A DNA stretch of 64,000 nt from Octopus bimaculoides (lineage: Eukaryota), in contig NC_069001.1 in NCBI RefSeq assembly GCF_001194135.2, positions 8,347,680 to 8,411,679 on the forward strand, written 5' to 3'. Both the position numbers and the translations under genes were made by a program. The notes under the pieces were generated by a model. That model was not told where the DNA came from and ran no database searches. It saw only the letters and a list, made by a program, of their open reading frames with translations. This document shows positions 7,900 to 50,899 of this stretch, one piece after another (the first letter of the stretch is position 1; each line of letters opens with the position of its first letter).

Positions 7900-8002
7900 T
7901 GACTTACCAGATGACCACGAAGTGTATAACAAAGAAACACAAGATGATAATCAGCAGATATATGAGGATTTGTGCTCGCTTAAACGCAAATCCACTTCAC
8001 AG
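7900..8002 (+). CDS. vav: Vav acidic-region exon, copy A: (S)[34 protein letters not shown]
   Basis: ttttccag acceptor, CAG|gtaaaa donor, 103 nt, phase 2 in and 0 out; contains IYEDL as around Vav1 Y174. Confidence 0.88.
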
Positions 8003-11580: not shown

Positions 11581-14500
11581 GCTGGGAGAGTAACTCAATC
11601 CATTGCCATCTCTATTCAGCCATGTACTATGAATAGATGGATTCACACCACCCCATTCTCACAGTTTAGTAGTGGAGGTCCTGCATAGTTTGTGGCTACA
11701 GTTCTTCCTCTGTGTAATTCCACCCCACCCTCCTCCAGATAATAGATAAGAAAGATACATATACACTACCAATGCAGTATGTTAAGGGTTCATATATATT
11801 ATTCTGGTTATTTTAGACATGAGCGTGGTTGTTTGGTTAACAAGTTCACTTTGTAACTGTTATTTTGGATTCCATCCCATTGTTTTGCACTTTTAGCAAG
11901 TATAGTGTAACCCAGTGCTTTTCAAACTATCTGATGTGGCATACCGGCAGTTTTTTTTTTCCCAATGTGCCAGGGACCAGTAATATTTCTTAGTAATATT
12001 AATTTGTACTGGAAACAAAATATATAATGACTATAATAAAAGTTGATAATTCTTTTATCTTATATTTATTTTGCAAACAAATAATACAATAATACATAAG
12101 CATTTTATAATGTTTCTTTCTTTTCTGGAAACTTGCCGCATACCGGCAGCTGATGGCTCGCAGAGTAGCACTTGTCTCCTTGTATATATGTGAGGCTACA
12201 TTATTCATTGTTACATTCTGTATTTAAGATTATAGGGTGTAATATAAGAGAGATTTGGCTGCAATTTCTTGCAGGTTGTGCAACTGCATAGACTTTCAAT
12301 CACTGATTCATGTTCTGTGAGTGTATTTTTTTTTTATGTATGATACCTGACTTGTGTCTGGATAGATGATATACTAGAGATGAAAAGGAAGTATTCAAAT
12401 ATCAGAGTTGCTTCTAGATGTCCGATGTGCCACTGTTCAAGGCAAATTACTATGCTAGGCTGAGAACAGGTTCCATATTTACTTTGTTGTTGAGTGACGA
12501 ACACAGTTATTCAACCGTAGAAATAATAGCTCTGATAATGCATAAATGTCTTAAATTTCATCTCTTATCATCATGGAAACTGCCATGTAATTTTAATGCT
12601 AAAACATGCATGCACATGCACACACACATACACGCACACATGCACACAAAATTCAAGCAAGTGATTGGATTTGGAAACTCATGCTATGTTCTAGAAGTTC
12701 ATTTTTTAGACTAATTGTTGCTACCATCCTGTCAATTTGTTCACAAATGGCAACAAATCATTCTTATGTTATTTCTTATAATGAAGCTCTGTCATTTCTA
12801 TGCCTGCATCATTGACATTGATCTTTAACAATATAATCACTGTCACGACAAGCTAATGGGACAGGCTGTTCATGGTAATTTCAAGTCCTAGAAGGAACAT
12901 CTTCACAATTTTTGGGGTTGCAAGATATATCTGTCAAATCTCCCTTAAATTGCATTATTGTCTAGAAAAAGAAATGCACATTGGATAATGTAGTCTTAAT
13001 TTTGGTGGCAGTTCTAATTCTGTCATATAGTTTAACACAACCACTTGGCTCTCATGTGCCTTCAGCAGTGTCTGTCTGCTCTGTTGCAAGTATGTGAGTC
13101 AAGTCTCCCAACTTCCCCACAGTCTTAGATGCTTTTCAAAATTGAGACGGAGGATTGCTTTTCTCTTTTGATTGAGCCATAAAAAAAATATCATAAAAAA
13201 AGAAGATATATTATGGGATTGTCATGGCTGGAACGCCTTTGATCGTAGGTCTATTGCAGTTTGAAGAACTTGAGAGTAAACAATAACAACAACAACAACA
13301 ACAACACCATAATTGAAATCAGTCGTGCCACGAACACCACTACGATCACCTTCATATGTCTGTTGGATTAGGACTGGACTGGACTGGACGGAGGGGAAGG
13401 TGGCAGTGTGGGGGGGGGGGAGACTAAACTATAACAACAACAACTATACAATTTCTCTTGAGCATTTACATTCGTTTTTTTGTTGTTGTTTTATTTTGTC
13501 TTTTATTTTTGTTTTTACTCTTGTTATTTAGTAATTTATCACAAGTTTTTGTCTTCAGCCTCCTACAACCACTACCACAATCTGACCATTGTCCACAAAC
13601 CTATCTGCTACTATACATAGAATTAATATGTTCACCCTTCCTTTCCAGTCTTGCCCTTCACCTCAGTCTGATGTTACTACCACCACCACCACCTTGCACC
13701 ACCTCTGTTCCTCCTCCCCCTTATTTTTTAATTTTATTTTTTCCCTTTTTTTTAAAGAAATTTATTTCCAGTGATTTGTTTGCTGTTTTTCTTTTTATAT
13801 TTTTTTTATTTCATTATTTTTTTTCTTTCCATTTGCTGTTTTTTTAATTTTTAATTTGATAATTTTTTTGTTTTATTTTGTTTGATCAATGTTGTCTTTT
13901 CATTTCATTTTATTTTATTTTATTTTAGTTTGTATTCTTGATTTCTAATTTTATATTTTTTATTTTTTGCTGTTTTTTGTTGTTGTTGTTGCTGCTGTTG
14001 TTTTGATAGTAGGTGTTTGTTTGTTGTTAGTTGTTGTAATCCATATAAGCTTTGTTGTTGTCGTTGTTGTTGTATATAGTGAGAATGACTTGGATGATAA
14101 CCAGGATTTATATGATGTCGTGTACGACGGCGAGGAAGATGAACAGATATATGAACACTTGTGTATTCGACATCAAAGATTCTCCACAGTAAGTCAGCAC
14201 AGAAAAGATTTCCTTCTCTCACATTACCCCTCCATGTCCCACCCCTTCCTGTTCAGATACCTTCAGACAGCTGCTGGTCCCCACCCCACAATCTACAACC
14301 TTTTAAAATTATATTAAATTTAACCATCATATGTAGTACAGTGTCACATATAACAAATGCATTGTTTCAAGCAATATGGGTCCAAAAGTGACACCGTCTT
14401 ATGGCAGAATGCCTCCTACAACATTGTGTCACATACAGCATAATGACTTGTCGGTTGGCACGTAAAACACCCACTACACTCTCGGAGTGGTTGGCGTTAG

Positions 14501-17500: not shown

Positions 17501-18213
17501 GCTATGTTTCTCAAAAGTACTGCTATAAATTTTACAGAAATCTGTATTAATATTTGAGCATCTTGGAGACTTGTAATTCATGTTATTATTATTCACAAAT
17601 ATGATAAATAACACAAGGTAAGCATTAGTTTCTATATACAACTTCCTAAATGAATTGCATCAGTAATTTCTTTGATCTCCAGTATACCACTAAGTCAAAA
17701 CAACTGAGAATCACTGTATCAGTGCTAAATACCTTACTCTACATTGTTCTATACCTCTACATTCTGCCACAGTCTCCTTTAACTCTTTCCCCATTATACC
17801 ATTGGGGTACCGTTAAATAATTTTTCTTCATGCAGTGCGTATCTTGAGGAGTAAAAAGCTGTATGGCAGTTTACATTCCTCTCAAAACTATACTACCTCT
17901 CAAAAAACAAAAAAGAGTTTACTTTAGCACAGAAGGCTAATTGAACACCTGTCAGCTTGTCGGCATTGCCTCAGCTTACAGCTGCAGGTTATATTTTTTT
18001 AAATATTTCTTTGTATCTTGCATTTTGTGAATGATAGCAAGGTTGGTTATGTAGTTCCAACTTGTGATATTTATGATGTCAAGAGTGATAAAGGAGAACC
18101 TGTTTTACATGGGTAGAAAAAATACCCCAAGGTATTTGAAAACACTAGATTTACTGTCATTTTTTACCAATATACTACCCCCCCCCACCCACACACACAC
18201 ACCCACCCACACA

Positions 18214-22300: not shown

Positions 22301-25300
22301 TATAATAGTGCTCACTTGCTTAGTAAATATTGCTTTCATTGTATCACAGTCATAATCTCTCTTTTTTACTGAGAATACTGAGATTTGTTGAGATGTTTGT
22401 GGGAGAAGGTTAGAAATCACAAAATCCTAGACAGATGGTCATGCAAAACAATGTGTATGTGGAAATTTGAAATATGTTGAGACAACCAGATGCGAGTCTA
22501 TTGGCACTATAAGTATTAGGGAGTAATACTACAAAACTGAATATCAACCATGAATTTCCCCCTGTACACAATTATAATAGTAACATTAGCAACATGTTGG
22601 TTCTCTAGTTTGACACCAGCCATTAAACATGTATTTTTGTTTGATAAACAATGTTTCAAATCCCCGTTATAATTACTGATAATATATTTACTGCTATTTT
22701 GATTCTGTTGTTTCTATTTTATCACTGATCATTGATTAAATTCGTTTTTTTTTTTTTTGTTTTTTTTTTGCTTTTATCTAACTCTTTTCTTTCTCTCTCC
22801 ATAATCTTCTTTCACACTTCAAGGAGTGTCAGACAAGAGCAAATGATGGAAAATTTCGTCTCCGAGACCTTCTCTCTGTGCCGATGCAGCGTGTCCTCAA
22901 ATATCATCTGTTACTGAAGGTATGATGAGCAATACATACTCCTTAAACAATCTATATCTTCATATTCTCTTCATATTGTATATATATAATTGTACACACA
23001 CACACATTCATTCAAAGACTGGAAAAGTTTGTATATTTTTAATTCTATATTACACGCGCTTCATTATAGTATTGGAAATACATTACAAATATAAAAATTA
23101 TTATTTATCATAATAATGATATAAATATGATAATAGTTGTATACATGTTAACTACATTGATGAGGACAGCTTGGATTATAACCCCTTCCGTCTCTCTCTC
23201 TCTCTTGCTCTCTCTGTCACGCATGCACACACACACACACTTACTTTGTCTTTATTTTTATTTCTTTTAAATATTCTCTCTCTGCAGGAATTAATTAAAC
23301 AAACAGATAAAACGGATGATGATCGGAAGAATCTAGAAATAGCTTTAGAAGCTATGCAGGTCAGTCTCTTATAAATTTTCTAAAATACAAGCATCATTAC
23401 TCAGTGTCTTTGATGATGTTATGTCTGCATTTGAATGCGTTTGATTGTGCTATACTGTACGTGTGCACTGTGGATGCTAGCAGGGGTATGTGGTAAAGAA
23501 GTTAGCTCTGAAATCCTGAGGCTTTGGGTTTCATAATCTAGGATCTCGTGATCACATACTGTAATTCAAAGAGCTAGCTTCATCACACACTGTGACAAAG
23601 CATTAAGGATACATAGACCTGTGGAATACTCAGCCACATGCATTACAATTCATTGACCAAGCAGTTGAGTTTGAGAACTGGAATATTCCTTGTTGAAACC
23701 TAATGGAAATCCATTAAATATTGTGGTCTTTGTGTGTGTGTGTTTTGCTGTCAATGTATCTGTTTTGCTGTGAGTATATTTGTTGTTGGTGTGAGTCGTG
23801 TATATAGAATGAAATAAAATGCAAAAAGAGTATCAAACTCAAATACTTTGTTCCTACCCCAAATACACACACAAATTCATAGAATCTAAATTCTTTACTG
23901 CCAGATATTGATAACCTGAAAGATCCAATTTTTTTTTTTTTTAAATCTCTTTGTCTAAAGGCTTTGTCCAACATGTTAGAGCTTTCTTCACACAAAAGCA
24001 TGTAAACTTACTGAAATTTATATCTTATCACCAGCAATTTATATCTTATCACCACTGCTAGCTTTCTTGGATTTGGGTCTTTTATTTGCATGTGCGCATG
24101 CGCACACATACTCACACACACATACACACATTTATAATTATTGAGTAAGTCTCTCTCTCTCTCTGTTTCAGGATTTATCATTATATGTAAATGAAGTGAA
24201 GCGTGACAATGAAGCTGTTGACCTTATTGAAGAAATTCAAAACAGGTAGGACTCCTCTCCATCGTTGTTGCTGATATTAGTGTGGTGGTGGTAGTATTAT
24301 TAGTAGTGTCAGTGGGGGAAATGGTTGTGGTTATGGTAGAAACGGTAAGTTTGTGTGATTGTTATGTCAGTGGTTGGGTGGCTATACTGCTACTTCTAAA
24401 ATTATTACACCATCATCATCATGTAATAATTTAATATTCGTTTTCCATGCTGGCATGGGTTGGATGTTTTGACAGAAGCTAGCAAGCTGGAGAGCTGCAC
24501 CAGACTCCAACTGGCCGTTTTGGCACAGTTTCTACAGCTGGATGCCCTTCCTAATGCCAACCACTTTACAAGGTGTACTGGGTGCTTTTTACATGGCACC
24601 AGCAAGTAAAAATTCAAATTTTGTATTAGAAGCAACTCCATAATGTAAACTTTATCAACATTACATACTTAATGTATGTGTTTTGTTAAAAACTTGTAGC
24701 TGTTGTATTTTGTCAAAGAGACTAGTTATATATACTTCTGGTTGGCTTTGCAGATGTGTTTTGGGAGTGGAGTGAACATACAGCACCAACAAGCAGCAAA
24801 AACTGCAATATTATCTGTTCTTTCTTTTTCACTTCCAAGACAATTCTGTTTTGCCTAGCCTTGAAATATACTGTGTTTTTCTCACACTATATATCCTTCG
24901 AGTGGATAAATCTTTCGCCTTTACTATATATCTTTAAAGAGATTTTTGTAGCTACAAGCATTAAGCAACACACATACATTAAATTTGTGATATTGATAAT
25001 TAAATAATGTTGTGGTGCTAACAAGTGTGCATTTGGATTCTCTTGCACCATATCCCAGCTAACAGCAAATGTTAGTATAGGATAATGGTATTGAATGACA
25101 ATAATAATACATTGATGCCAGTGTATGATGAAACCTGCATGAGATAACATTAATGGCATGTGATGACACTAGTGTGTATTATGAATTATTTATTTTTAAA
25201 ATTACTTAATCAGAGGTAGAAGGGCAGTGGTCATGACTCCTTTCAGGGCCTCCTCTTTTCATGACCATTTTCAGGGTCTCTTATACTGATAGGTGGAGAG

Positions 25301-26547
25301 GCAGACTGGAGACTGGGTCTGAATGCTAGCAATGGAATAGACTTCACTAAAAGCACCCAAGGACCACATACTCAGTAGTATTAAACCATGTAGTGGATTA
25401 AATCTACTGACTTGATTTGATGACAGCATTAAATGATGTCATCATCGTCAGCAGCAACTAATAAATGATGTATGATATTAAAGACATTGGTGGTCTTAGG
25501 CTGAAAATATTAATAGCATGATTTTAATGTGATGATGATGATGATGAGAGCTGTGCCATAGTAGTTAAAGTAGGAGTGGTTAGTGTGCTGCTATGGCCTT
25601 CACAGTATTTTGTGTGTTTGGCTCATGATCAGAAGGATGTGTGTTCAGTTTCTTGACTGGGCATTGCATTGTGTAATTTCATGTTGATTCAGCCTACTCA
25701 ACTGTAATGAGTGCCAGTGGGATACTGGTGCAGCTCTCTCTTCTCTCTCTCTCCCTCTCTCTCTCTCTCCTCCTCCTCCAACTGTCACATCCTGGATGTT
25801 TCACTGAGTCAATGTTGAGAAATTTGAAGCAATTAGCAAAAGCATGATACATGTTACCAAGCCATACTTGCTCAAGAGCGATGATGGTTGGCTGTAATTT
25901 AGCGTGTCAGTAATAATGATAACATGATAGTAGTGATGGCTGTGTGTTATTTTCGAATTAAGCAGCTCTGTTTTTATATAACATGATTTCATTTTTGTTT
26001 TGTTTCTCTTTGCAGTATTGTTGATTTACAGATGGTGAGTATATCCTCTACTATCATTCTCTTTATTTACCCCATTTGTTTACCCTTTATCTATCCTGTC
26101 TCCTTTATTCAAAGGGACCTATTTATAATCATTTTCATAAGAGTCATATGGTTACTTGTGTCTTGGTGAAGGCAACCCATTTAGAAGCGAGGATACAACC
26201 CAAAGCCTTGTATCACAGAATATGAATGATGGTTTCTCTGATGTTGACAATATTTTATATATATATACTTCATTTCCTACATATGTTTATGCTTGTTTCG
26301 ATGGTAATGCTGTATATATATACATATAAATGTAAATGCTTTCCCAAATACAGTTGCATTTTATTTTTGAAACTCTGATGAAGCTATAGGGTGATACATA
26401 AGCACTAAATGATGAGCGCATTGCATCGTATAGCAGAAACAGCTATAAGCTAATGGAGCCCACAACACAATTTTTACACTCTTGTCATTTAAATTTTTTA
26501 TTACTGCTCTCTCTCCTTCTCTCTCTCCACACACACACACACACACG

Positions 26548-26597
<50 letters not shown>

Positions 26598-29500
26598 AAG
26601 AGGAAGAAAAAGGAAAGATAGAAACAAAACTCATCCCATTCATAAAAGCATGGGTAAATTTGATATGAAATAACGGAGATAATGATGATAAAAATGATGT
26701 GGTGGTGATAATGGCAATGGTTGTGATGGTGACCATGGTCATGATGATGATGATAATGATTGTGATGATGATAATAATGGTGGTCTTGATGATAGTTGTG
26801 GTGGCTGTAATTATGATTATGTTGATGATGGTCATGATGGTCATGATGATGGTGCTTCCCATGATTCAGAAATGATTAGTCAGCAATTATATAAACTGGT
26901 TTACTTCACTACATCATCATGTCAACAGAAATAATGTTAATACCAACTTCCCACGCAGACAGTATCCCAATGCATACATAATTCATTCAGAAACAATCAA
27001 GACATGAGTCAGTGAATGAGCACCGATATGGTCACTGGACCTACTAGAAATAGCAGCCAAATCCCCCTCATATCTCATCCTACTATTTTTCAAGAAAAGT
27101 TAAGTTGGATAATGTGTCCTAAAAAAACAATGATCATGGCTGGAATGGCCTTTGATCATGTGCCTGCTCAATCAGGGCTCACCTGGGGTTATCACAACGC
27201 ATATATACTACAAAACACACATAATCATTACATGATGGATCCCTTATTAGTTACAGGTGTGAACATTTAGCTGTTCAATCAACTGGCTTATCTATTTATG
27301 AAATGAGTGTGCAAATGGATGAGTATTCCTAAGACACATGTGTCCACAATATAATTCTCAATTTACATTAGCATCACGCAATATTTGACATGGATGGACT
27401 TTTGTATTACAGATAAAGTTCATTCAATTGTCTTCGATATAGTCTCTGTATACACAGTTTCCCTCACAAGGCTTGGACCAGCCTGAGGCAATGATGTACT
27501 CTTGAGTATATGAAGTCACTACTGATATGTATGTATTTTTTCATCAGTGACCATTATCATTGTCTTGCAGCCCCCTAATATTTCCCTGAAGGATTATGGC
27601 CGTTTACAGAAAGATGGTGATTTGAAAGTGAGATGTCATTCTGATAACCGAGCACGACCAAGGTAAGTAACTAAAGAACTTCTCTTCCCATTTAAAAGAA
27701 TCTTTTGAATGGTTCTGCTGGAACGGGGTTGTTTGCAAATGTTGTGTAGCCCCAGATCATTCTTGATCAGGCAAACCCATGTTCACTGTTCCAACTCTGA
27801 CCATTTTCTCTTTCATTAAGAACATGGTGCATCTAGGATTATATTATGCATTGTATCCCATCCTGGTTATTGTTATTTAGCTTCAGGATAGTTCATTTCA
27901 TGTGGAGGCGCAATGGCCCAGTGGTTAGGGCAGCGGACTCGTGATTGTAGGATCGCGGTTTCGATTCCCAGACCGGGCGTTGTGAGTGTTTATTGAGCGA
28001 AAACACCTATGAGATCTTGAAATCTTGAAGCTATGAGATAATGCAGGATTAATTCAAAACGATGTGAATGAATTAACATTATATTTGACTTAGTAATCTG
28101 AATGCTAATGTGTTAATTTTTATTTCTAATCCCTTTGAGACGATATTTTCTGAGCAAGATTTAAATTTTAGTAAAATGTTTTTTTTTTCCTTCATTTCCT
28201 TTCTAGATATATTTTTCTTTTTGACAAAGTGATGCTTATGTGTAAATCACGGGTAAGTGAATTATTCTAAAATCTTTTATTCTTTTTATTCTACATACAT
28301 GTACGTAGTAAAAAAATACAAAAAATATGTTTTAGATATATTATAGCACTGTTCTCCGATTTCTCATTTGCTGCCGATATTGAACATTCTTGCTGAAGTT
28401 TATGTATTATTTTTCTTAATTTATGATATTTCTCATTACTAGATATTGTATGTGCGCCAATTTGAGAGAGAAAAGGCTTCATAGTGAGATGCAAACTGTG
28501 TATATATCACTTGATGAGTAACCATGTTGCCAATTACAATACAGAACACCTCTCTATTTATGTCTCTGTCTCTCCCTTTCTCTATCTACTCAGTTCCCAT
28601 CCACACTTTTCTCTCATGACATCCTCTTCTTTTTGCCTATCTCCCTCATATGTTATTTATGTTCACTTCTATTAAGTAACCTCCTTCACTTATTATTGCC
28701 ATGATTATCTTTGTTTGCATTTGTTGTTTTATGATACATTCTTTTCTACAGAAATGCGTTGAAACAATAGAACCATTGTCAGCAATTACATTGTTAAAAT
28801 AAACCTCTCTCTCTTTCTCCCCACACCCATCTCTCCATCCATATAAATATCCACTTATAATTACTGAAAAGCGATAGATGCAAGCTTCAAGTCCTCCCAG
28901 TGGGCAAGTTGTCTTGTTTTCTGTCACAAATTGTTATGTTTCACAAAATTAAAATCTTCGTATTTATTAATGTTATTAAACAATATTGGAAAACGTTTTG
29001 GTTTTAATGCAGAAGAAAATGTCCTTCAAGTGGCAGGAATTTAGTTTGAGCTTGAGGAATTATTCCAAGATGTCTAGAAGTTTCTAATTAATTTTTGATT
29101 TTAATACATCAAGTTTTCTCTCATTCATTTATTTAACTTTTTTTACATTATTTTTTTGTTAACTATCAGTTCATCAGTGTTCATCCATTCAGTTTTCAAG
29201 ACATGTCTACATGTTCAAAAGTTCACCTATCCTTCTGCAACAACCTTGTCTTTTTCACTACTGTTTCTCCATCACCTTCTTTTTTTAGATTGAGATTAAT
29301 CTATTTGAAGATGTCATGTCTCAGTTCATTTCAGTATAATTCCCTTCAGTTCAGCCAAGCTCACTTCACTTGCTTGAGCTCAATCCTCTACAGTTCAGTT
29401 GAGCTATGCCCAAATCAATACAGTTAACTCAAGCTCCAATCCACTACAGTTTAGTTGGGCTCAGTTCAATACAGTTCCATTGAATTTGGTTCAGTACAAG

Positions 29501-33602: not shown

Positions 33603-33847
33603 AAACCATTAAAATATTTTCTGTNNNNNNNNNNATATAGCCTAGTTCCTTTTCTTGAGTTTTGCCTCACCAGCTGGGCCAATAATTTATGCTGAAATGA
33701 TATTATTAATATAGAATCTCTCTCTCTTTCTCTCTCTGGCTTCAGTCCTTCTTCCTTTCCTTTATGTAACAAATTTTGTCCCTACTTAGCTGTTTTAAGG
33801 ATCTTTATAATGTAGCTCTTACATTCACTGTACTTTCACACTTTGGC

Positions 33848-33891
<44 letters not shown>

Positions 33892-36625
33892 AAACCATTA
33901 AAATATTTTCTGTACAATAGAAATATCACCAATTTATTGCACATAGATTTTAACAATGAAATCTATGTGGACCTCCAATCTGGGCTTATATGGACCCTGG
34001 TTGAGAACCTCTGTTGTATATCCTAGTTCTTATATATGCTATTTCTTTATATATATCCTAGTTCTGACCACTCATATAGCACTTTTGATGCTATATAATT
34101 TAGTATTTTCTCATATTTGTTTGTAAACTTATTGAGCTTTTTGTTTCCTGTTGATTCTAAAAATGTTAAAACTATTTACCCTGGTAGTTGTCCCTCAAAG
34201 CAATAAGATTATATATGCTTGTAATTGTTATCCACTAAATCCATTTTAAGACTATGATATATCCTGTTAACTCTTACTCACTATAGCAATGTTAAGACTG
34301 TACACCCTACTAATTGATGCCCATTAAAGCAATGTCAATATTTATTTGCCTTAGTTCGTATTGACCCAATATTATTTATTTTAGTTGTTGTCCCAAGACT
34401 GTATACCCAAGTTGTAACCCCATTAGCTAATGAATTTGATATTATTTAGCTAAATCAAAGAATCTCTAAGTAATTTATTGCACTCCTCCCTAACTCAACA
34501 ATTATTCTTTGGGTTGGGGTGCATTTCCCTTTGTTTCTGGTGCAAATAGTATTTATTTTGAATGGTTGAATACTTTCATTCTTAGATGTGATAAACTGAT
34601 GCTTAGTATATCTCTACATCTTCAAAAGCACTATGCATACAAACTACAGTGCACTTGTATGTGTACACACTACACTCTCTCACAAGCATATTCATACACG
34701 CATCACTTATACACATATGCACATACATGTATGCACACATTGACCTATAAACATTTAAGCTGAACATCAACCATATCAATGTCAAAGTTTGTTGGTCTTA
34801 TCTCTCTTCTGACTAATATATTAAAGAGAACAAAAAAAATCATATTCTCTTTTTTATAATTAAATTCTTGTTTTCTCTCGCTCATTAAACAAAAATTTAA
34901 TTTTCTATTCTTTCCTTTTGTTTAAAACTATTCTTTGTTGTTTGACTTGGTTTCAAACACTAATTATGGAAAAAACAAAAAAACCCTCAAAAAAAAAAAA
35001 AAAAAAAAAAAAGAAAGCCAAGAAGGTGATTGATATTTTCTTCAGTCCATCCATTAAAAAGTTAGCAATGATGACAAAGATGACACTGATGCTGATAACA
35101 ATGGTTTGATATCTTCAGTTGCGAACATACGAGTAAGAAATGATACTGTTTAGTAAAACTGTATCTGAAAAATCTCGTGATGTAGAACTTCAAATTACCT
35201 CACCACCTCCAACACCACCACTGTGTGAGAGTGTATGTGTATGATTATATATATGTGTGTATGTATGAATATCCCACCACTATCTAAATATTATAATGAT
35301 ATTGTCTTCTCTGTCATTCTGTAAAATGTCAACTTTATAGCCATGTAATTTTATGTTCTGTATTTTACTTCACTTTAAAATATATTATACCACACATGTC
35401 TCCAAAGTATCATATTGACCAGAATTTTTATGGCTAAATACAAACTGTCTCCTTTATAACCTTGACTCTGCTGACCACTTGTTTGTGTGTTCTTGTAGCA
35501 ATGTAACCCTGGAGATTGAATGACCAGTTGAATGTGATCGTTGTTGCTTAACTCTGGCTCAGCCCAAATCCAGCAGATATATAATCAAAAGCAATCCAGC
35601 TGTGGTTATCCTGTCTTTTGAGGTGTATATCTAAGACCACACCTAATGTTTACTTCATTTTCTAAGGCAACAGAATATAATTTTAGAAGACTATTTCTAT
35701 CAGATGGAATGACCATATAAAGTTATCACATCAGCTGTGAGCATTTGAATGTGGTTGTGTATTAGAGTACTGGTCAGAAATGTTTTCTAGCTAAACTGTT
35801 TCTGAGGTTTTTGTTTCATGGGGGCTTCAGGAAGAGAGTAGGGGTCATGAAATATTCCTGTATTGACTGACTCCTAGTAACTGATGTTTCCTGTGCAACA
35901 ATGGTTATTTATCATAGGAATGCAAAAGTTCAGCTTCTCTAACTTGAAAGCTACCAACTCACTTCCCTATTTTGTCTCTAGTTTCTTCAGTTTGGTGTCC
36001 AAATCTCTTCACCTCATCTTTCATCTTGTGGATGGAACACAATTTGGGTAGATAAAATGGTGGCTGGATTCAAGCAAAGACTACCCTAAAACAGAAAAAA
36101 AAAAAATTGAACGGCATGTTTTCTTTTAAATTTTATTTATTTGTGTTGTTCATTTGTTTGTTTCTTTTCTTTTTTTCATGATGAATTTTGTTTTGTTTTA
36201 ATTTTGTCTTTTTTATATTTTCGCCTCCTGTTACACCAGATTGTGGATAAACTCTTTTGGGTAAGGCCAACTGAATGACCGATTCTCTGGATGTGTTTTC
36301 AATCAGCTGTCCCTTTCGATATGCTCCCCCATCCCCGTCCCTTAATCCACCACTCCCAATGTGTCGCCGCTGCCGTTGCCGCCCCGCTCCTGGTCCCTGG
36401 ACCAGTGCCCACTGACATGTCTCGCCATAACTTTTTTTTTTTTCAGACCCTTAATTCTTTTACCCCTCCATTCTGATACTAACACTACTACTACTACTAC
36501 TACTGCTGCTGCTACTATTACTACTATTACTACTACTACTATTGCTGCTGCTGTATTGACCACTATTACTACTACTACTACTACTACAGTGCCTGGATTT
36601 TGTGCACATTTTATTATCATTATTG

Positions 36626-46500: not shown

Positions 46501-49393
46501 GATCCATCTTTTAACCACCTTTTAATTCACTGGAGTGTTGAGGAAACCCCTTTCTGTCATTCATCATGGGTGTTTTTGTGTGTGTTTTCAGGGAGAAGCA
46601 TATAGTTATAAAGAAGCTATTGCTCTTGGTGAATACCGAATTGATGAACAAGTCCCTAGTCGGGATCAACAGAGGAAGCCTGATAAGGTATGTAATGTAA
46701 TGATATGTTTGTCCTCTGTATGTCAACTTTAAGCTTTATATTGAAAGTTTACATATATGTGAAATAATGAGCTGTATAGTATATTGTTTAATTAATTTTG
46801 ATTGCTTCTTGCCATATGATCATCATTTCTTTCTAAACAGAGTATTTATAAGGTACGTATGTGTCCAAATGAAGAAATATATATAACACAAGTATAGAGG
46901 GTCTGAAGAGAGTTAAAGGGCACTTAAAATCATAATAGCCAACTTCCTGATCGTGTATTGTCGTAATCTAGATTCTAACTCAAAGTAATCATCACAACAT
47001 TGTCTTGTATATTTACATTTGCATATACGAGATTACATCATATACTGAGATATTCTTTGCCTGGATGTATTTGCACTGAAGACAGGCAATGAGAGCTACC
47101 ACTTGTCTGACAGGACACTTATTTGTAACTATTGTGGGAAGCATAAACAAAGAAGCAAGAACACTTCCGCACACACACACATGACAGACTTCTTTTAGTT
47201 TTTGTCTACCAAATCCATTGAAAAGGTCTTTGGTCAGCCTGAGGCTGTTGTAGAAGGCATTTGCTTAAAATTCCACTTGATGTGTATTGTATAATTGTAT
47301 GATTATTATTGGTTGATACTTCAATCATCACCACCTTCTGGTGTAACAGATTATTTATGAAATTTCTGTGCATCTAAATCAGAGAGTGTTTTGTGAATCT
47401 GAAGAGAGTCTAATGAGATTTAAAAAATCATAACAAGCCACATCTTAATTACATTTTTTCTTGCATTTAAGTTTTATTTAGATCAATCATCATTTAACAA
47501 CTTGAATATATTTATATACTCATGATATTTTATGTCTTTTACTGTATAGTGTATGATATAATTAATATCAGTTGATATTTATCAAACCATCACCACACTT
47601 TATATAACAAAGTCTTTAACATATCTATCATCATCATCATCATCATCGTTTAACGTCCGCTTTCCATGCTAGCATGGGTTGGACGATTTGACTGAGGACT
47701 GGTGAAACCGGATGGCAACACCAGGCTCCAGTCTGATTTGGCAGAGTTTCTACAGCTGGATGCCCTTCCTAACGCCAACCACTCAGAGAGTTACATTTAA
47801 TATTTATGAAGTGTTTATATACTAGATCATGCAGCAGGTATTGTGGGTTTGAAGAGTGTGCATGGAGATATGAAATCATAACAGTTCAATCCCTTAATAT
47901 GATCTCATTTAATCTTTGGTTTTATCCCAGAATAATCTTCTCAACAATATTATATATCCAATACTGGTTTAGGACATGAGTCTCAAAAGAATTAAATGGT
48001 TTTTATGTTTTCAATTTTTGTAATACCTTCTGGTATAATTTTTTAACAAGCTTTATATTGTTTAGGGCTTCATCAAGTCTAAATCAAGTACTGTGTGGTA
48101 ATGAACATATATATATTTCATGCTGTATGCAGTGATGAATGATAAAATGATGTTTTCAGTTGAAACTGTGCTAGCTATAGAATAAAGAATATCTGAAATC
48201 CTAGGGAGTTAAGTTTTGGTATAGAATGGTGCTCTTATAAGACGATTTCTAGGAAGGAGATTGCTAGATATAATCAGGGTTGATTGTAGGTGTAATGAAA
48301 GAGAAGAAATAAGATAGTCAGATGAGACTTTAGGGAGTGTAAAATTGAGGCTTCATATTGAACTGTAAAGAGGTTAGACCTCCAAAAATATGGATGACTT
48401 GTGTTTGAAGAAATAATCTTTAGATATCACTGACAAACAAACACCACGTCAATGTTATTGATTCTGTTAATTTAATTATTTACTCATTAATCTGTTTTAT
48501 TAATGAGACTATCAGTGCATTAAATTATGTACTTTCAATTTTAGCATATCCTTCAGGCAATTAGGTTTGAGTTATGTGAAAGAAGGTGTGGCCTTTGTGT
48601 ATGTGTGTTTAATAATTATTTAGATAAAATGTAAATAAATGGATCATATACAAGTTTGGGTCTCCAACCAGGTCTTTCACAATATCCTTAAAGCCAGGAA
48701 CTTCTCAGCACCCCCTTGTATACTGGTGAAAGTTTTAAACAAGTAAAAAAAAAAAACCCTACAAAAAGTCATGAGCACTACCTTTCCACCTCTAACTGAA
48801 TCATTAAAGAAAAAAAAAAGAGAAAGAGAGAAAGAACAACCTATTTCACTTTAGGTATTCAAGGGCCAGGTGAATGTATTAAATCATGTGGCAGATTAAT
48901 AATACATCCAAGAGCAGATTACATTTACCACCCAACCACTTAGATTTGTATGGCTTCTTATTTACCCTAATTGACTTGAAAGCCTTGGCTCACTTCAAGG
49001 CTATAGTAGAAGACATACAAGATGCCACTCAACAGTATCAAACCTTCTGCTTCTTTATGACAGTTAAGGCATGATTTAAGGAAGATTTGTCTGTTATTTT
49101 TAGCAGGCTGAGTAACTACATAGACACACACACACTCTCTCTTTCTCTCTCTCTCTCTCCAACTGGCGTAACTCTGCTGTTTCAGATTTGAAGTGGTGCT
49201 ATCTAAAGTTGCAATAATCCAATTGATAGGGATCAGATAGTCTGTCAGAACACCTGTTCTGGTGGCTGCGGAGGTAGATGGTCATTGATGTGTTCAAAAA
49301 GGGTCATTTAAAGTGGAGTGGAGATAGTTTATTGAAGGGAATAATGGGAAAATGGAAGAAATACTCTCTCTTCCTCTCTCTCTATGTATGTAT

Positions 49394-49675: not shown

Positions 49676-50899
49676 ATTTCAGGTAGTCTTTACAAAACCA
49701 CTAGTTGGATTTATTTGAGATATTTTTGTGTGTGTGCATGTGCATATATATATGTACCTGCACACACACACACACACACACACACACCCACATGCTTATT
49801 CATGTATAGATTTAAAAATACATATATGCATACAACAAATGCACAGACATATACAGACATATACTGAGAGAGAGAGAGAGAGAGAGTTGAGGAGCAGAGT
49901 TTGTTGAGTACAAAGTTTATTTGTTGATATTAGACTTCATGGAAATGTATATAATCTTTTATATCTTAATTTCAGTCTGCCAAAGTCACTGTTTATCAAA
50001 GTCTATTCCTATCCCNNNNNNNNNNNNNNNNNNNNNNNNNNNNNNNNNNNNNNNNNNNNNNNNNNNNNNNNNNNNNNNNNNNNNNNNNNNNNNNNNNNNN
50101 NNNNNNNNNNNNNNNNNNNNNNAAAAAAAAAAAAAAAAAAAAAAAACTAACACTGCACAAAATGCTATACCATTTCTCTTTACAGTGGAACTTTTCCTTC
50201 ACGATGGTGCAGAAAAATCAAGAGCTAGCTTATACTTTCTTTGCTAAAACCGATGACATGCGTAGTAAATGGATTGAAGCAATTTTACTGTCACTGTGAG
50301 TTCAAACTGCTACTGCTGTTCCTCCGTTTCCCTAATGGTTTAATTTTCTTTTCCTTTTTTTAAAAAACTTTAATAATTACTGACCTGGAGAGAATAAATG
50401 TGTGCGTGTATACGTTTGTGTGTGTGTGTGTATGATGATAGACTCTCACATTGGTTTTGCCATGTTGAGGATCCAACAACCTATTCAGTTTGTTTAGCTT
50501 GGATGTTCAAGTCAGGTATAACAGTTTTAGTCCCTGGATAATTCCAGATCCCAGATTTCTGGCTCTGCATAAGAAATGCTCTGCCCTCATCAGTGGAATA
50601 CACTCAGATAGCTCATAAATACAAATATACATATATATTTATATTTATGTGTTATCTGAGAGTATTCCATTGATGAAGGCAGACCCATCAAGCCAAGTGA
50701 AATCGTAGTTGTGGCCGATGCTGGTGTCGCATAACTGGCACCCATTACACTCTCAGAGCAGTTAACATTAGGAAGGGCATCCATCCATAGAGATCATGCC
50801 AAATCAGACTGGAGTCTGGTACAGCCCCTCAGCTTGCCAGCCCTGGTCAAACAGTCCAACCCATGTCAGCAATGACAACAGACATTAAATGATGATAAG

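What the first reader, a model, noticed from the sequence alone, without database searches (positions are those of the whole stretch)
46841..46852. 12-nt microexon candidate (SIYK) at the PH position where vertebrate VAV2 has a short alternative insert
Seen: tttctttctaaacag|AGTATTTATAAG|gtacgt, 153 nt after the KPDK exon, frame-neutral, with TGC motifs upstream; it gives ...KPDK-SIYK-WNFSF. From memory (needs verifying): human VAV2 has [15 protein letters not shown], with the insert reported as a neural microexon. Inference: an ancient or convergent neural microexon at the same intron position, here adding a tyrosine.
Basis: partly seen in the sequence, partly recalled or inferred. Interest (0 to 1): 0.7.

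Follow-up and report, generated by a model that had tools for sequence, protein, structure and literature searches.

The report
Predicted 12-nt VAV microexon, unverified
A 12-base stretch with good splice signals sits in the same intron of a mollusc VAV gene where fish and mammal VAV2 carry a brain-specific 15-base mini-exon, so it is a credible but still unproven mini-exon that most likely arose independently.

Summary
The sequence is as described. AGTATTTATAAG (46841-46852) follows tttctttctaaacag and precedes gtacgt. It lies 153 nt after the ...RKPDK exon, in a phase-0 intron, and would read KPDK-SIYK-WNFSF.

It is the best in-frame pseudo-exon in the 3.5-kb intron by a wide margin. A candidate this good arises by chance in about 3-9% of introns of this size. 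It also has two TGC motifs (-38, -31) and a 59-nt AG-free zone upstream.

Seal VAV2 has [10 protein letters not shown] and trout has [14 protein letters not shown]. The trout gene shows the 15-nt microexon in exactly the same phase-0 K|W intron.

Three mollusc sequences (two transcripts and one gene model) carry a different 15-nt insert there (STQRG, GLQRG, RLERG). Scallop, oyster and annelid isoforms carry none. SIYK resembles neither type of insert and lies in one unit of a locally triplicated intronic repeat.

No cephalopod sequence or RNA data could be reached, so inclusion and neural specificity are untested.

Verdict: a plausible lineage-specific cassette microexon (about 0.55) at a recurrent site. 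It is more likely convergent than ancient.

A much better supported, deeply conserved 21-nt microexon (IVDKLFW, 36240-36260) was found nearby.

The parts
46592..46687 (+). Upstream constitutive PH-domain exon ([32 protein letters not shown]). It ends in phase 0.
   Evidence: tblastn of mollusc VAV proteins; boundaries read (ttttcag|GGAGAA ... GATAAG|gtatgt).
46780..46838 (+). 59-nt AG-free zone upstream of the candidate acceptor. It contains two TGC motifs (46803-46805, 46810-46812), TTGAT/TTAAT branch-point-like motifs and the pyrimidine run tttctttct.
   Evidence: Only 5.5% of AGs in the window have 58 nt or more AG-free upstream. Two or more TGC in -45..-8 occur at 8% of AG sites.
46839..46840 (+). 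Candidate acceptor AG (aaacAG|A).
   Evidence: acceptor score 2.9, within the range of real exons of the gene (-1.95 to 12).
46841..46852 (+). Candidate 12-nt cassette microexon AGT ATT TAT AAG = Ser-Ile-Tyr-Lys.
   Evidence: It is the top-scoring in-frame candidate in the intron (8.27 against 3.93).
46853..46858 (+). Candidate donor GTACGT (AAG|GTACGT; 8 of 9 matches to MAG|GTRAGT).
   Evidence: score 5.4; real exons score 2.7-7.6.
46760..48260 (+). Three degenerate copies of an intronic repeat unit of about 480 nt (starts near 46760, 47270, 47730). The candidate lies in unit 1. Unit 2 has AACAG|ATTATTTATGAA|atttct (no donor). Unit 3 has no acceptor.
   Evidence: the repeat finder; alignment A2, 63% mean column identity. 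No other copy elsewhere in the window.
50016..50122 (.). Assembly gap (107 N) in the same intron, 64 nt upstream of the next exon. It could hide sequence, including another microexon.
50186..50295 (+). Downstream constitutive PH-domain exon ([36 protein letters not shown]...).

Best explanation
The 12 nt at 46841-46852 are a lineage-specific, alternatively spliced cassette microexon of a mollusc (probably cephalopod) VAV-family Rho/Rac exchange factor.

Proposed mechanism:
- The phase-0 intron that splits the beta5-beta6 loop of the PH domain (K|W) is old. It is shared with bivalve and gastropod VAV and with vertebrate VAV2.
- In this lineage, one unit of a locally triplicated intronic repeat has an acceptor and a strong donor 12 nt apart.
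- The exon is too short for ordinary exon definition. Inclusion is therefore expected to need help at the weak, distal-branch-point 3' splice site. The most likely helper is the neuronal eMIC-domain isoform of Srrm234, acting through the UGC motifs at -38 and -31, as for other bilaterian neural microexons.
- Inclusion lengthens a flexible surface loop of the PH domain by Ser-Ile-Tyr-Lys, without disturbing the fold.
- By analogy with the zebrafish vav2 microexon at the same site, this would tune exchange-factor output.

Shown: the sequence, the frame, the splice-signal quality relative to background, the identity of the intron position with VAV2, and the location in a loop.

Inferred: that the exon is spliced at all, that inclusion is neuronal, that it depends on the eMIC domain, and any effect on activity.
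For: Sequence and frame.

Splice signals:
- The candidate is the top in-frame candidate in the intron, 8.27 against 3.93.
- 3% of shuffles match it.
- The minus-strand background is 0.05-0.09 per intron of this size.

The same scan recovers true small exons at similar scores:
- the 19-nt constitutive exon (window 26016, and its orthologues in L003, L004 and L002);
- the conserved beta3-beta4 microexon in the window (36240, score 9.7) and Elysia (L004 18061, score 9.6). The scallop copy (L003 18888) fell below the threshold.

Upstream features: a 59-nt AG-free zone (seen at 5.5% of AG sites) and two TGC motifs (8%). These are the features reported for eMIC-dependent exons in flies and mammals (PMC8797185).

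The same K|W phase-0 intron carries:
- a 15-nt neural microexon in vertebrate VAV2 (L022; PMC12626424);
- a 15-nt insert in three mollusc sequences: two transcripts (L001, L021) and one gene model (P0002).

An AlphaFold model of P0016 puts this site in a low-confidence beta5-beta6 loop.
Against: - No transcript, junction read or annotated isoform containing SIYK could be retrieved. Nor could any with the skip form from this species. The reachable protein index appears to lack proteins over about 500 aa.
- No cephalopod orthologue was available, so conservation of the 12-mer is unknown.
- The exon has no similarity in length or sequence to the mollusc xx[QE]RG or the vertebrate S[HS]GKM inserts.
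- It sits in a repeated, apparently fast-evolving piece of intron.
- The acceptor is weak (2.9). The TGC motifs are further from the acceptor than in trout (-14, -10).
- The weight matrix is generic and the threshold was set after the fact. About half of plus-strand hits at this score in the annotated scallop locus are not known exons.
- A 107-N gap in the intron could hide the real orthologue of the mollusc insert.
Confidence: 0.55

Rival explanations
1. Chance pseudo-exon. The AG...GT pair is a fortuitous product of an AT-rich, locally duplicated intronic repeat and is never, or only negligibly, spliced into VAV mRNA.
For: - A candidate this good is expected in roughly 3-9% of introns of this size. 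About half a hit per strand is expected in a 64-kb window that was scanned as a whole.
- The segment is one of three decayed repeat copies. Unit 2 also shows the long AG-free stretch upstream of its AACAG, so the AG-free zone is partly a property of the repeat.
- There is no similarity to the inserts seen in other molluscs.
- Bivalve and annelid isoform sets have nothing at this site.
Against: - It is the only such candidate in the very intron that carries a microexon in vertebrate VAV2 and in some molluscs.
- Its score matches verified microexons of the same gene.
- The TGC motifs are specific to unit 1 of the repeat.
- The minus strand of the window has no equivalent hit.
Confidence: 0.35
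2. Ancient orthologous microexon. SIYK descends from a single bilaterian neural microexon in the K|W intron, the same one that gave vertebrate S[HS]GKM and mollusc xx[QE]RG. It was shortened by one codon and has diverged.
For: - The intron position and phase are identical in trout VAV2, scallop, Elysia and this window.
- Three of the five inserts seen or predicted here (SHGKM, SSGKM, STQRG, GLQRG, RLERG) share with SIYK a loose S-x-x-[K/R] start.
- The eMIC machinery dates to the bilaterian ancestor (PMC8797185).
Against: - Length differs (12 against 15 nt), and there is no significant sequence similarity.
- The insert is absent from the listed scallop RefSeq isoforms, from oyster models and from Owenia isoforms. 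The scallop intron is only 290 nt.
- By contrast, the neighbouring 21-nt microexon is clearly conserved over the same distances (IVDKLFW, MVDKFLW, MVDKLLW). A constrained ancestral exon would therefore be expected to remain recognisable.
- Even between flies and mammals, only 4 eMIC exons share a position, and most of those are judged convergent (PMC8797185).
Confidence: 0.07
3. A real splice site but not a coding cassette. The acceptor and donor act as a decoy, a recursive-splicing intermediate or part of a longer poison exon. They would affect splicing kinetics or mRNA level rather than add SIYK to the protein.
For: A strong donor only 12 nt after an acceptor is the arrangement seen at recursive-splice exons (general knowledge). 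The site lies only 153 nt from the upstream exon.
Against: - The intron is only 3.5 kb, which is short for recursive splicing.
- The segment is exactly frame-preserving and stop-free, which a decoy does not need.
- No alternative downstream donor scores well.
Confidence: 0.03

Closest known systems
Vertebrate VAV2 15-nt neural microexon (S[HS]GKM), Srrm3/4-dependent (PMC12626424)
   Same: - Same gene family and same PH-domain loop.
- Exactly the same phase-0 intron between ...KK and W... (trout L022).
- Frame-preserving and very short.
- UGC motifs and a long AG-free zone upstream.
   Different: - 15 nt, not 12, with no sequence similarity beyond a leading Ser and a Lys at position 4.
- The trout UGC motifs hug the acceptor (-14, -10) and the AG-free zone is 109 nt, against -38/-31 and 59 nt here.
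- Inclusion, neural regulation and a threefold gain in SRF-reporter activity are shown experimentally for zebrafish. Nothing is shown here.
Mollusc VAV 15-nt insert xx[QE]RG (transcripts L001 STQRG and L021 RLERG; Batillaria gene model P0002 GLQRG)
   Same: Same intron position in a mollusc VAV orthologue. The insert is seen spliced into RNA-derived contigs.
   Different: The length and sequence differ (AGCACGCAGAGAGGG and AGACTGGAGCGTGGG against AGTATTTATAAG). No xx[QE]RG-coding segment with splice sites exists in the assembled part of the window's intron.
Lophotrochozoan VAV 21-nt beta3-beta4 microexon ([IM][VM]DK[LF][LIF]W), present in this window at 36240-36260
   Same: Same gene and domain. 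It is a short frame-preserving cassette in a PH loop, alternative in scallop and Owenia isoforms, and it has a similar splice-score total (9.7).
   Different: That exon is conserved in sequence across molluscs, an annelid and a bryozoan. It has no TGC within 150 nt upstream and has a 145-nt AG-free zone. SIYK has no known orthologue.
Cytohesin-1/GRP1 3-nt microexon in the PH domain (diglycine/triglycine variants; PMC6314551)
   Same: A microexon that alters a PH-domain loop of a small-GTPase exchange factor and thereby changes its behaviour (abstract seen).
   Different: It is in a different gene family and, from memory, a different loop (beta1-beta2). It adds a single Gly, with a documented switch in phosphoinositide specificity. 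No lipid-binding role is known for the VAV beta5-beta6 loop.

Membership tests
VAV-family guanine nucleotide exchange factor (host gene) | Acidic region, DH, PH, C1, SH3 and SH2 domains in order on one strand. | tested here: met
   tblastn of mollusc and vertebrate VAV proteins places these exons in order on the + strand. The spliced DH-PH-C1 matches VAV1 structures 2VRW, 3BJI and 3KY9 at E = 1e-55.
Cassette microexon (3-27 nt) | Length 3-27 nt, canonical AG/GT boundaries, frame-preserving and stop-free. | tested here: met
   12 nt, cag|...|gtacgt, in a phase-0 intron, reading SIYK.
Cassette microexon (3-27 nt) | Observed inclusion and skipping in mRNA. | not testable with these tools
   No transcript or protein of this species covering the junction could be retrieved. 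No RNA-seq access.
eMIC (Srrm234/SRRM3/4)-dependent neural microexon | UGC motifs close upstream of the 3' splice site, a long AG-exclusion zone and a pyrimidine tract. | tested here: met
   TGC at -38 and -31; nearest AG at -63; tttctttct tract. The feature list is from PMC8797185. The motifs are more distal than in trout VAV2 (-14, -10).
eMIC (Srrm234/SRRM3/4)-dependent neural microexon | Neural-enriched inclusion, and loss of inclusion without the eMIC regulator. | not testable with these tools
   Needs tissue RNA-seq or perturbation.
Orthologue of the vertebrate VAV2 microexon | Same intron position and phase. | tested here: met
   Trout L022: exon ends GTGAAGAAG|gt, the microexon is at 17922-17936, and the next exon starts TGGTCC. 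Window: GATAAG|gt ... ag|TGGAAC.
Orthologue of the vertebrate VAV2 microexon | Same length and recognisable sequence similarity. | tested here: not met
   12 against 15 nt; SIYK against SHGKM/SSGKM.
Orthologue of the vertebrate VAV2 microexon | Presence in intervening lineages. | tested here: not met
   No insert in scallop RefSeq isoforms, oyster models or Owenia isoforms. The scallop intron is 290 nt, with no annotated microexon and no candidate as strong as SIYK. Sampling is limited to annotated isoforms.
Orthologue of the mollusc xx[QE]RG 15-nt insert | Same intron plus sequence and length similarity. | tested here: not met
   Same intron, but a different length and sequence. No [QE][RK]G-coding candidate with splice sites is in the assembled intron. 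The 107-N gap leaves a loophole.

The most novel reading that the evidence does not exclude
The K|W intron in the beta5-beta6 loop of the VAV PH domain is a bilaterian-wide microexon site. On this reading, vertebrate VAV2 S[HS]GKM, the mollusc xx[QE]RG insert and this SIYK are descendants of one ancestral neural microexon, or else repeated independent captures by the same eMIC machinery at one structural hotspot.

With the conserved 21-nt beta3-beta4 microexon and a possible beta1-beta2 insert, this would mean that neurons retune VAV by rewriting several loops of its PH domain.
Probability: 0.1. Interest if true: 0.75.

Novelty: new member of a known kind. Interest (0 to 1): 0.42.

Why it matters
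Few neural microexons share a position between vertebrates and protostomes. Only four are shared between flies and mammals, and most of those are judged convergent (PMC8797185).

The VAV2 microexon is one of the few with a measured effect: about threefold higher reporter activity, and a neurite-length defect when it is deleted in zebrafish (PMC12626424).

A mollusc microexon in the same intron would be a natural test of two things. One is whether certain protein loops are recurrent targets of the microexon machinery. The other is whether cephalopod nervous systems tune Rho/Rac signalling in the same way as vertebrates.

As it stands, the finding is a prediction from splice signals and position, not a demonstrated exon.

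Tried and rejected
1. Looking for this species' or any cephalopod's VAV protein or transcript:
- A 73-aa query with SIYK found nothing.
- A 281-aa DH-PH-C1 query found only relatives at 46% identity or less, all under 500 aa.
- A profile search found no cephalopod.
- The representative library gave bivalve, gastropod and annelid proteins at up to 63% identity over the full DH-PH-C1 query (65.6% over part of it).
- A scan of metagenome contigs found no cephalopod DNA.

2. Looking for an orthologue of the mollusc xx[QE]RG insert in the window's intron: none.

3. The runner-up candidate VFKGQ (48855-48869, 15 nt) was rejected for its weak acceptor; total score 3.93.

4. Genomic context of the gastropod insert:
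- Nucella P0005 is not on record.
- The Lymnaea locus stops one exon short.
- The Elysia K|W intron has no good candidate, but it has a 97-N gap.

5. Interspersed repeat or transposon origin: blastn found no other copy in the window, only the local threefold repeat.

6. A tRNA-like stretch in the intron at 27664-28206 was not called by ARAGORN.

7. Literature on cephalopod microexons: no relevant paper in the library.
Full report
THE OBSERVATION

The window carries, on the + strand, most of a VAV-family exchange-factor gene, from the acidic region to the SH2 domain. The PH-domain exon GEAYSYK...RKPDK occupies 46592-46687 and ends on a full codon. The next coding exon, [10 protein letters not shown]..., starts at 50186.

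In the 3498-nt intron between them, 153 nt from the upstream exon, the sequence reads catcatttctttctaaacag|AGTATTTATAAG|gtacgt. Every factual element of the finding is correct: coordinates, distance, frame neutrality, the reading KPDK-SIYK-WNFSF, and TGC motifs upstream (at -38 and -31).

IS IT MORE THAN CHANCE?

I scored acceptors and donors with a crude generic weight matrix against the window's base composition.

- The candidate scores 2.9 + 5.4 = 8.27. This is inside the range of the gene's real exons: acceptors -1.95 to 12, donors 2.7 to 7.6.
- Among all in-frame, stop-free AG...GT segments of 3-33 nt in the intron, it is first by a wide margin. The next best scores 3.93.
- Dinucleotide-preserving shuffles of the intron produce an equal or better candidate in 3% of 1000 trials.
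- As an empirical control I used the minus strands of the window and of three related loci (189 kb). They give about 0.05-0.09 such candidates per 3.3 kb.
- In the whole window, on both strands, only four segments reach the score: a 3-nt one, a piece of a real SH3 exon, a 21-nt microexon that proved to be deeply conserved (below), and SIYK.

The same scan independently recovered known small exons.

- It found a 19-nt constitutive exon in four species: window 26016-26034, Argopecten L003 13984, Elysia L004 11531 and Lymnaea L002 31445.
- It found the 18- and 21-nt beta3-beta4 microexon in Elysia and in the window. The scallop copy fell below the threshold.
- In the annotated scallop locus, roughly half of the plus-strand hits at this threshold are real exons or parts of them.

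Two further features point the same way.

- The nearest AG upstream of the acceptor is 63 nt away. Only 5.5% of AG sites in the window have such a long AG-free stretch.
- There are two TGC motifs in -45..-8, which is true of 8% of AG sites.

Long AG-exclusion zones, UGC motifs near the acceptor and pyrimidine tracts are the reported signature of eMIC-dependent microexons in flies and mammals (PMC8797185).

Caveats:

- The threshold was chosen after seeing the candidate.
- The AG-free stretch is partly a property of the repeat described next.

A COMPLICATION: THE CANDIDATE LIES IN A LOCAL REPEAT

The stretch 46760-48260 consists of three decayed copies of a unit of about 480 nt.

- Unit 1 carries AACAG|AGTATTTATAAG|GTACGT.
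- Unit 2 carries AACAG|ATTATTTATGAA|ATTTCT, with no donor.
- Unit 3 has no acceptor at the corresponding position.

No other copy exists elsewhere in the window. The candidate is therefore not an island of obviously constrained sequence. If real, it looks like an exon born from duplicated intronic sequence. The two TGC motifs are specific to unit 1.

CHECKING THE REMEMBERED VAV2 PARALLEL

The recollection is right.

- A seal VAV2-like protein reads ...[12 protein letters not shown] and then runs on through a gtgagc donor (P0030).
- A trout fragment reads ...[22 protein letters not shown] (P0210).
- Skip forms read ...KDIKK|WSYGF (P0014, P0017, P0043 and others).
- The zebrafish vav2 microexon is 15 nt and neural. 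Its inclusion raises SRF-reporter activity about threefold, and its deletion shortens neurites (PMC12626424).

I fetched the trout genomic locus, L022.

- The upstream exon ends GTG AAG AAG|gtaggc, in phase 0.
- The microexon TCCAGTGGAAAAATG lies 349 nt downstream of it and 350 nt upstream of TGG TCC TAT....
- It has TGC at -14, -10, -52 and -68, and no AG for 109 nt upstream.

In the protein alignment, the K|W junction of VAV2 is the same column as KPDK|WNFSF. The intron position and phase are therefore identical.

WHAT OTHER INVERTEBRATES SHOW

The K|W phase-0 intron is also present in the scallop Argopecten irradians (L003 26620-26909, only 290 nt) and in the sea slug Elysia marginata (L004 23499-24681).

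Three mollusc-type sequences carry a 5-residue insert exactly there.

- A metatranscriptome contig has ...KKQEK-STQRG-WNFPF, insert AGCACGCAGAGAGGG (L001).
- A second has ...KRSEK-RLERG-WNFPF, insert AGACTGGAGCGTGGG (L021).
- The Batillaria gene model has ...KKGEK-GLQRG-WNYPF (P0002).

So a 15-nt microexon with the motif xx[QE]RG exists at this site in some molluscs, probably gastropods. In contrast, the following have no insert at this site:

- the listed RefSeq isoforms of three scallop species, which do annotate other 15-27-nt cassettes;
- oyster models;
- four Owenia (annelid) isoforms;
- the Nucella, Elysia, Tegillarca and Mya models.

The Elysia and scallop introns contain no candidate as good as SIYK. 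The assembled part of the window's intron contains no xx[QE]RG-coding segment. A 107-N gap at 50016-50122 leaves a loophole.

SIYK resembles neither known insert, apart from a loose S-x-x-[K/R] pattern.

No cephalopod sequence of any kind could be reached. Conservation within cephalopods and actual inclusion in RNA therefore remain untested.

WHERE THE INSERT WOULD SIT

The spliced DH-PH-C1 of the window aligns end to end with the VAV1 crystal structures, E about 1e-55. The junction corresponds to ...DNKK|WSHMF in VAV1.

An AlphaFold model of the microexon-containing transcript product P0016 gives a normal PH sandwich. The site falls in the beta5-beta6 loop, which is predicted with pLDDT below 50. 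The 7-residue IVDKLIW insert falls in the beta3-beta4 loop.

Four extra residues here should be tolerated. They would change the length and chemistry of a surface loop, adding a Tyr and a Lys.

From memory, not tested here: the beta1-beta2, beta3-beta4 and beta5-beta6 loops line the open, ligand-facing end of PH domains. A 3-nt microexon in the cytohesin PH domain switches lipid specificity (PMC6314551).

MOST LIKELY EXPLANATION

I rate at about 0.55 that this is a genuine, lineage-specific cassette microexon. Its inclusion probably depends on neuronal eMIC-type activity acting on a weak acceptor with a distal branch point.

Given real splicing, independent origin at a recurrent site is much more likely than descent from the vertebrate or gastropod exon, for three reasons.

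- Lengths and sequences differ.
- Intermediate lineages lack the insert.
- The neighbouring 21-nt microexon shows what real conservation over these distances looks like.

The main rival, at about 0.35, is a fortuitous pseudo-exon in a repeated AT-rich intron. Common ancestry (about 0.07) and a non-coding decoy or recursive site (about 0.03) are minor.

NOVELTY AND VALUE

This is a predicted new member of a known kind: a neural-type microexon in a GEF.

Its interest lies in the shared position with the functionally characterised VAV2 microexon. It also lies in the wider pattern found on the way: lophotrochozoan VAV has short alternative inserts in several PH-domain loops. Without RNA evidence, the score stays moderate.

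Noticed in passing
window 36240-36260 (+): ATTGTGGATAAACTCTTTTGG (IVDKLFW) is a 21-nt microexon with acceptor cctcctgttacaccag| and donor |gtaagg. It lies in the 18.3-kb intron between exons ...[13 protein letters not shown] (28207-28252) and GEAYSYK... (46592).

The same 7-residue insert occurs at the same junction in scallops (MVDKFLW, alternative in RefSeq isoforms), the annelid Owenia (MVDKLLW, alternative), the bryozoan Bugula (IMDFLLW), two metatranscriptome contigs (IVDKLIW, IVDKLLW) and Elysia (MDKFWG, 18 nt).

Even the donor flank gtaaggc is shared with scallop. Trout VAV2 has no intron at this junction.
   Followed up: yes
window 26016-26034 (+): A 19-nt constitutive exon, TATTGTTGATTTACAGATG, reads (S)IVDLQM and joins ...EEIQN (exon ending at 24245) to [11 protein letters not shown] (exon starting at 27571).

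Orthologous 19-nt exons are in Argopecten (L003 13984), Elysia (L004 11531) and Lymnaea (L002 31445). Its omission appears to have split the Lymnaea gene model in two.
   Followed up: partly
window 7900-8002 and 14080-14188 (+): There are two alternative versions of the acidic, tyrosine-rich autoinhibitory exon: [25 protein letters not shown]... (103 nt) and [28 protein letters not shown]... (109 nt). Both are 3n+1 long, so including both would shift the frame, which implies they are mutually exclusive.

Argopecten RefSeq isoform X4 against X1 shows the same pair (DHDMPHDLEHTDTGQDEKIYDDLC against ENDLDDNEEIYDKVYQDDDEEIYEDLC). One version has fewer regulatory tyrosines.
   Followed up: partly
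Batillaria protein P0002 (junction equivalent to window 27662|28207): The Batillaria model has an extra FDHRGGEK between ...SRVRNR and RHIFLFDKV, in the beta1-beta2 loop of the PH domain. This would be a third possible microexon site in the same domain. No matching segment was found in the window's 544-nt intron with simple peptide patterns.
   Followed up: partly
window 27880-27990 (+), inside the intron 27663-28206: A tRNA-like or SINE-like stretch (ggaggcgcaatggcccagtggttagggcagcggactcgtgattgtaggatcgcggtttcgattcccagaccggg). ARAGORN does not call it a tRNA. It is probably a tRNA-derived repeat.
   Followed up: partly
window 5285, 9473, 33625, 38468, 40394, 41754, 50016, 58842, 63473: Nine assembly gaps (runs of 10-294 N). 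Those at 33625, 38468, 40394 and 41754 lie in the 18.3-kb intron, and the one at 50016-50122 lies in the intron under study. Small exons could be missing from the assembly.
   Followed up: no
Argopecten L003; proteins P0189-P0195: Scallop VAV isoforms also differ by a 15-nt cassette (GAGAS, after ...CIGKERER) and a 27-nt segment (EPCKEPRKP) in the C1-SH3 linker. Short alternative inserts are therefore frequent in this gene. I did not look for counterparts in the window.
   Followed up: no
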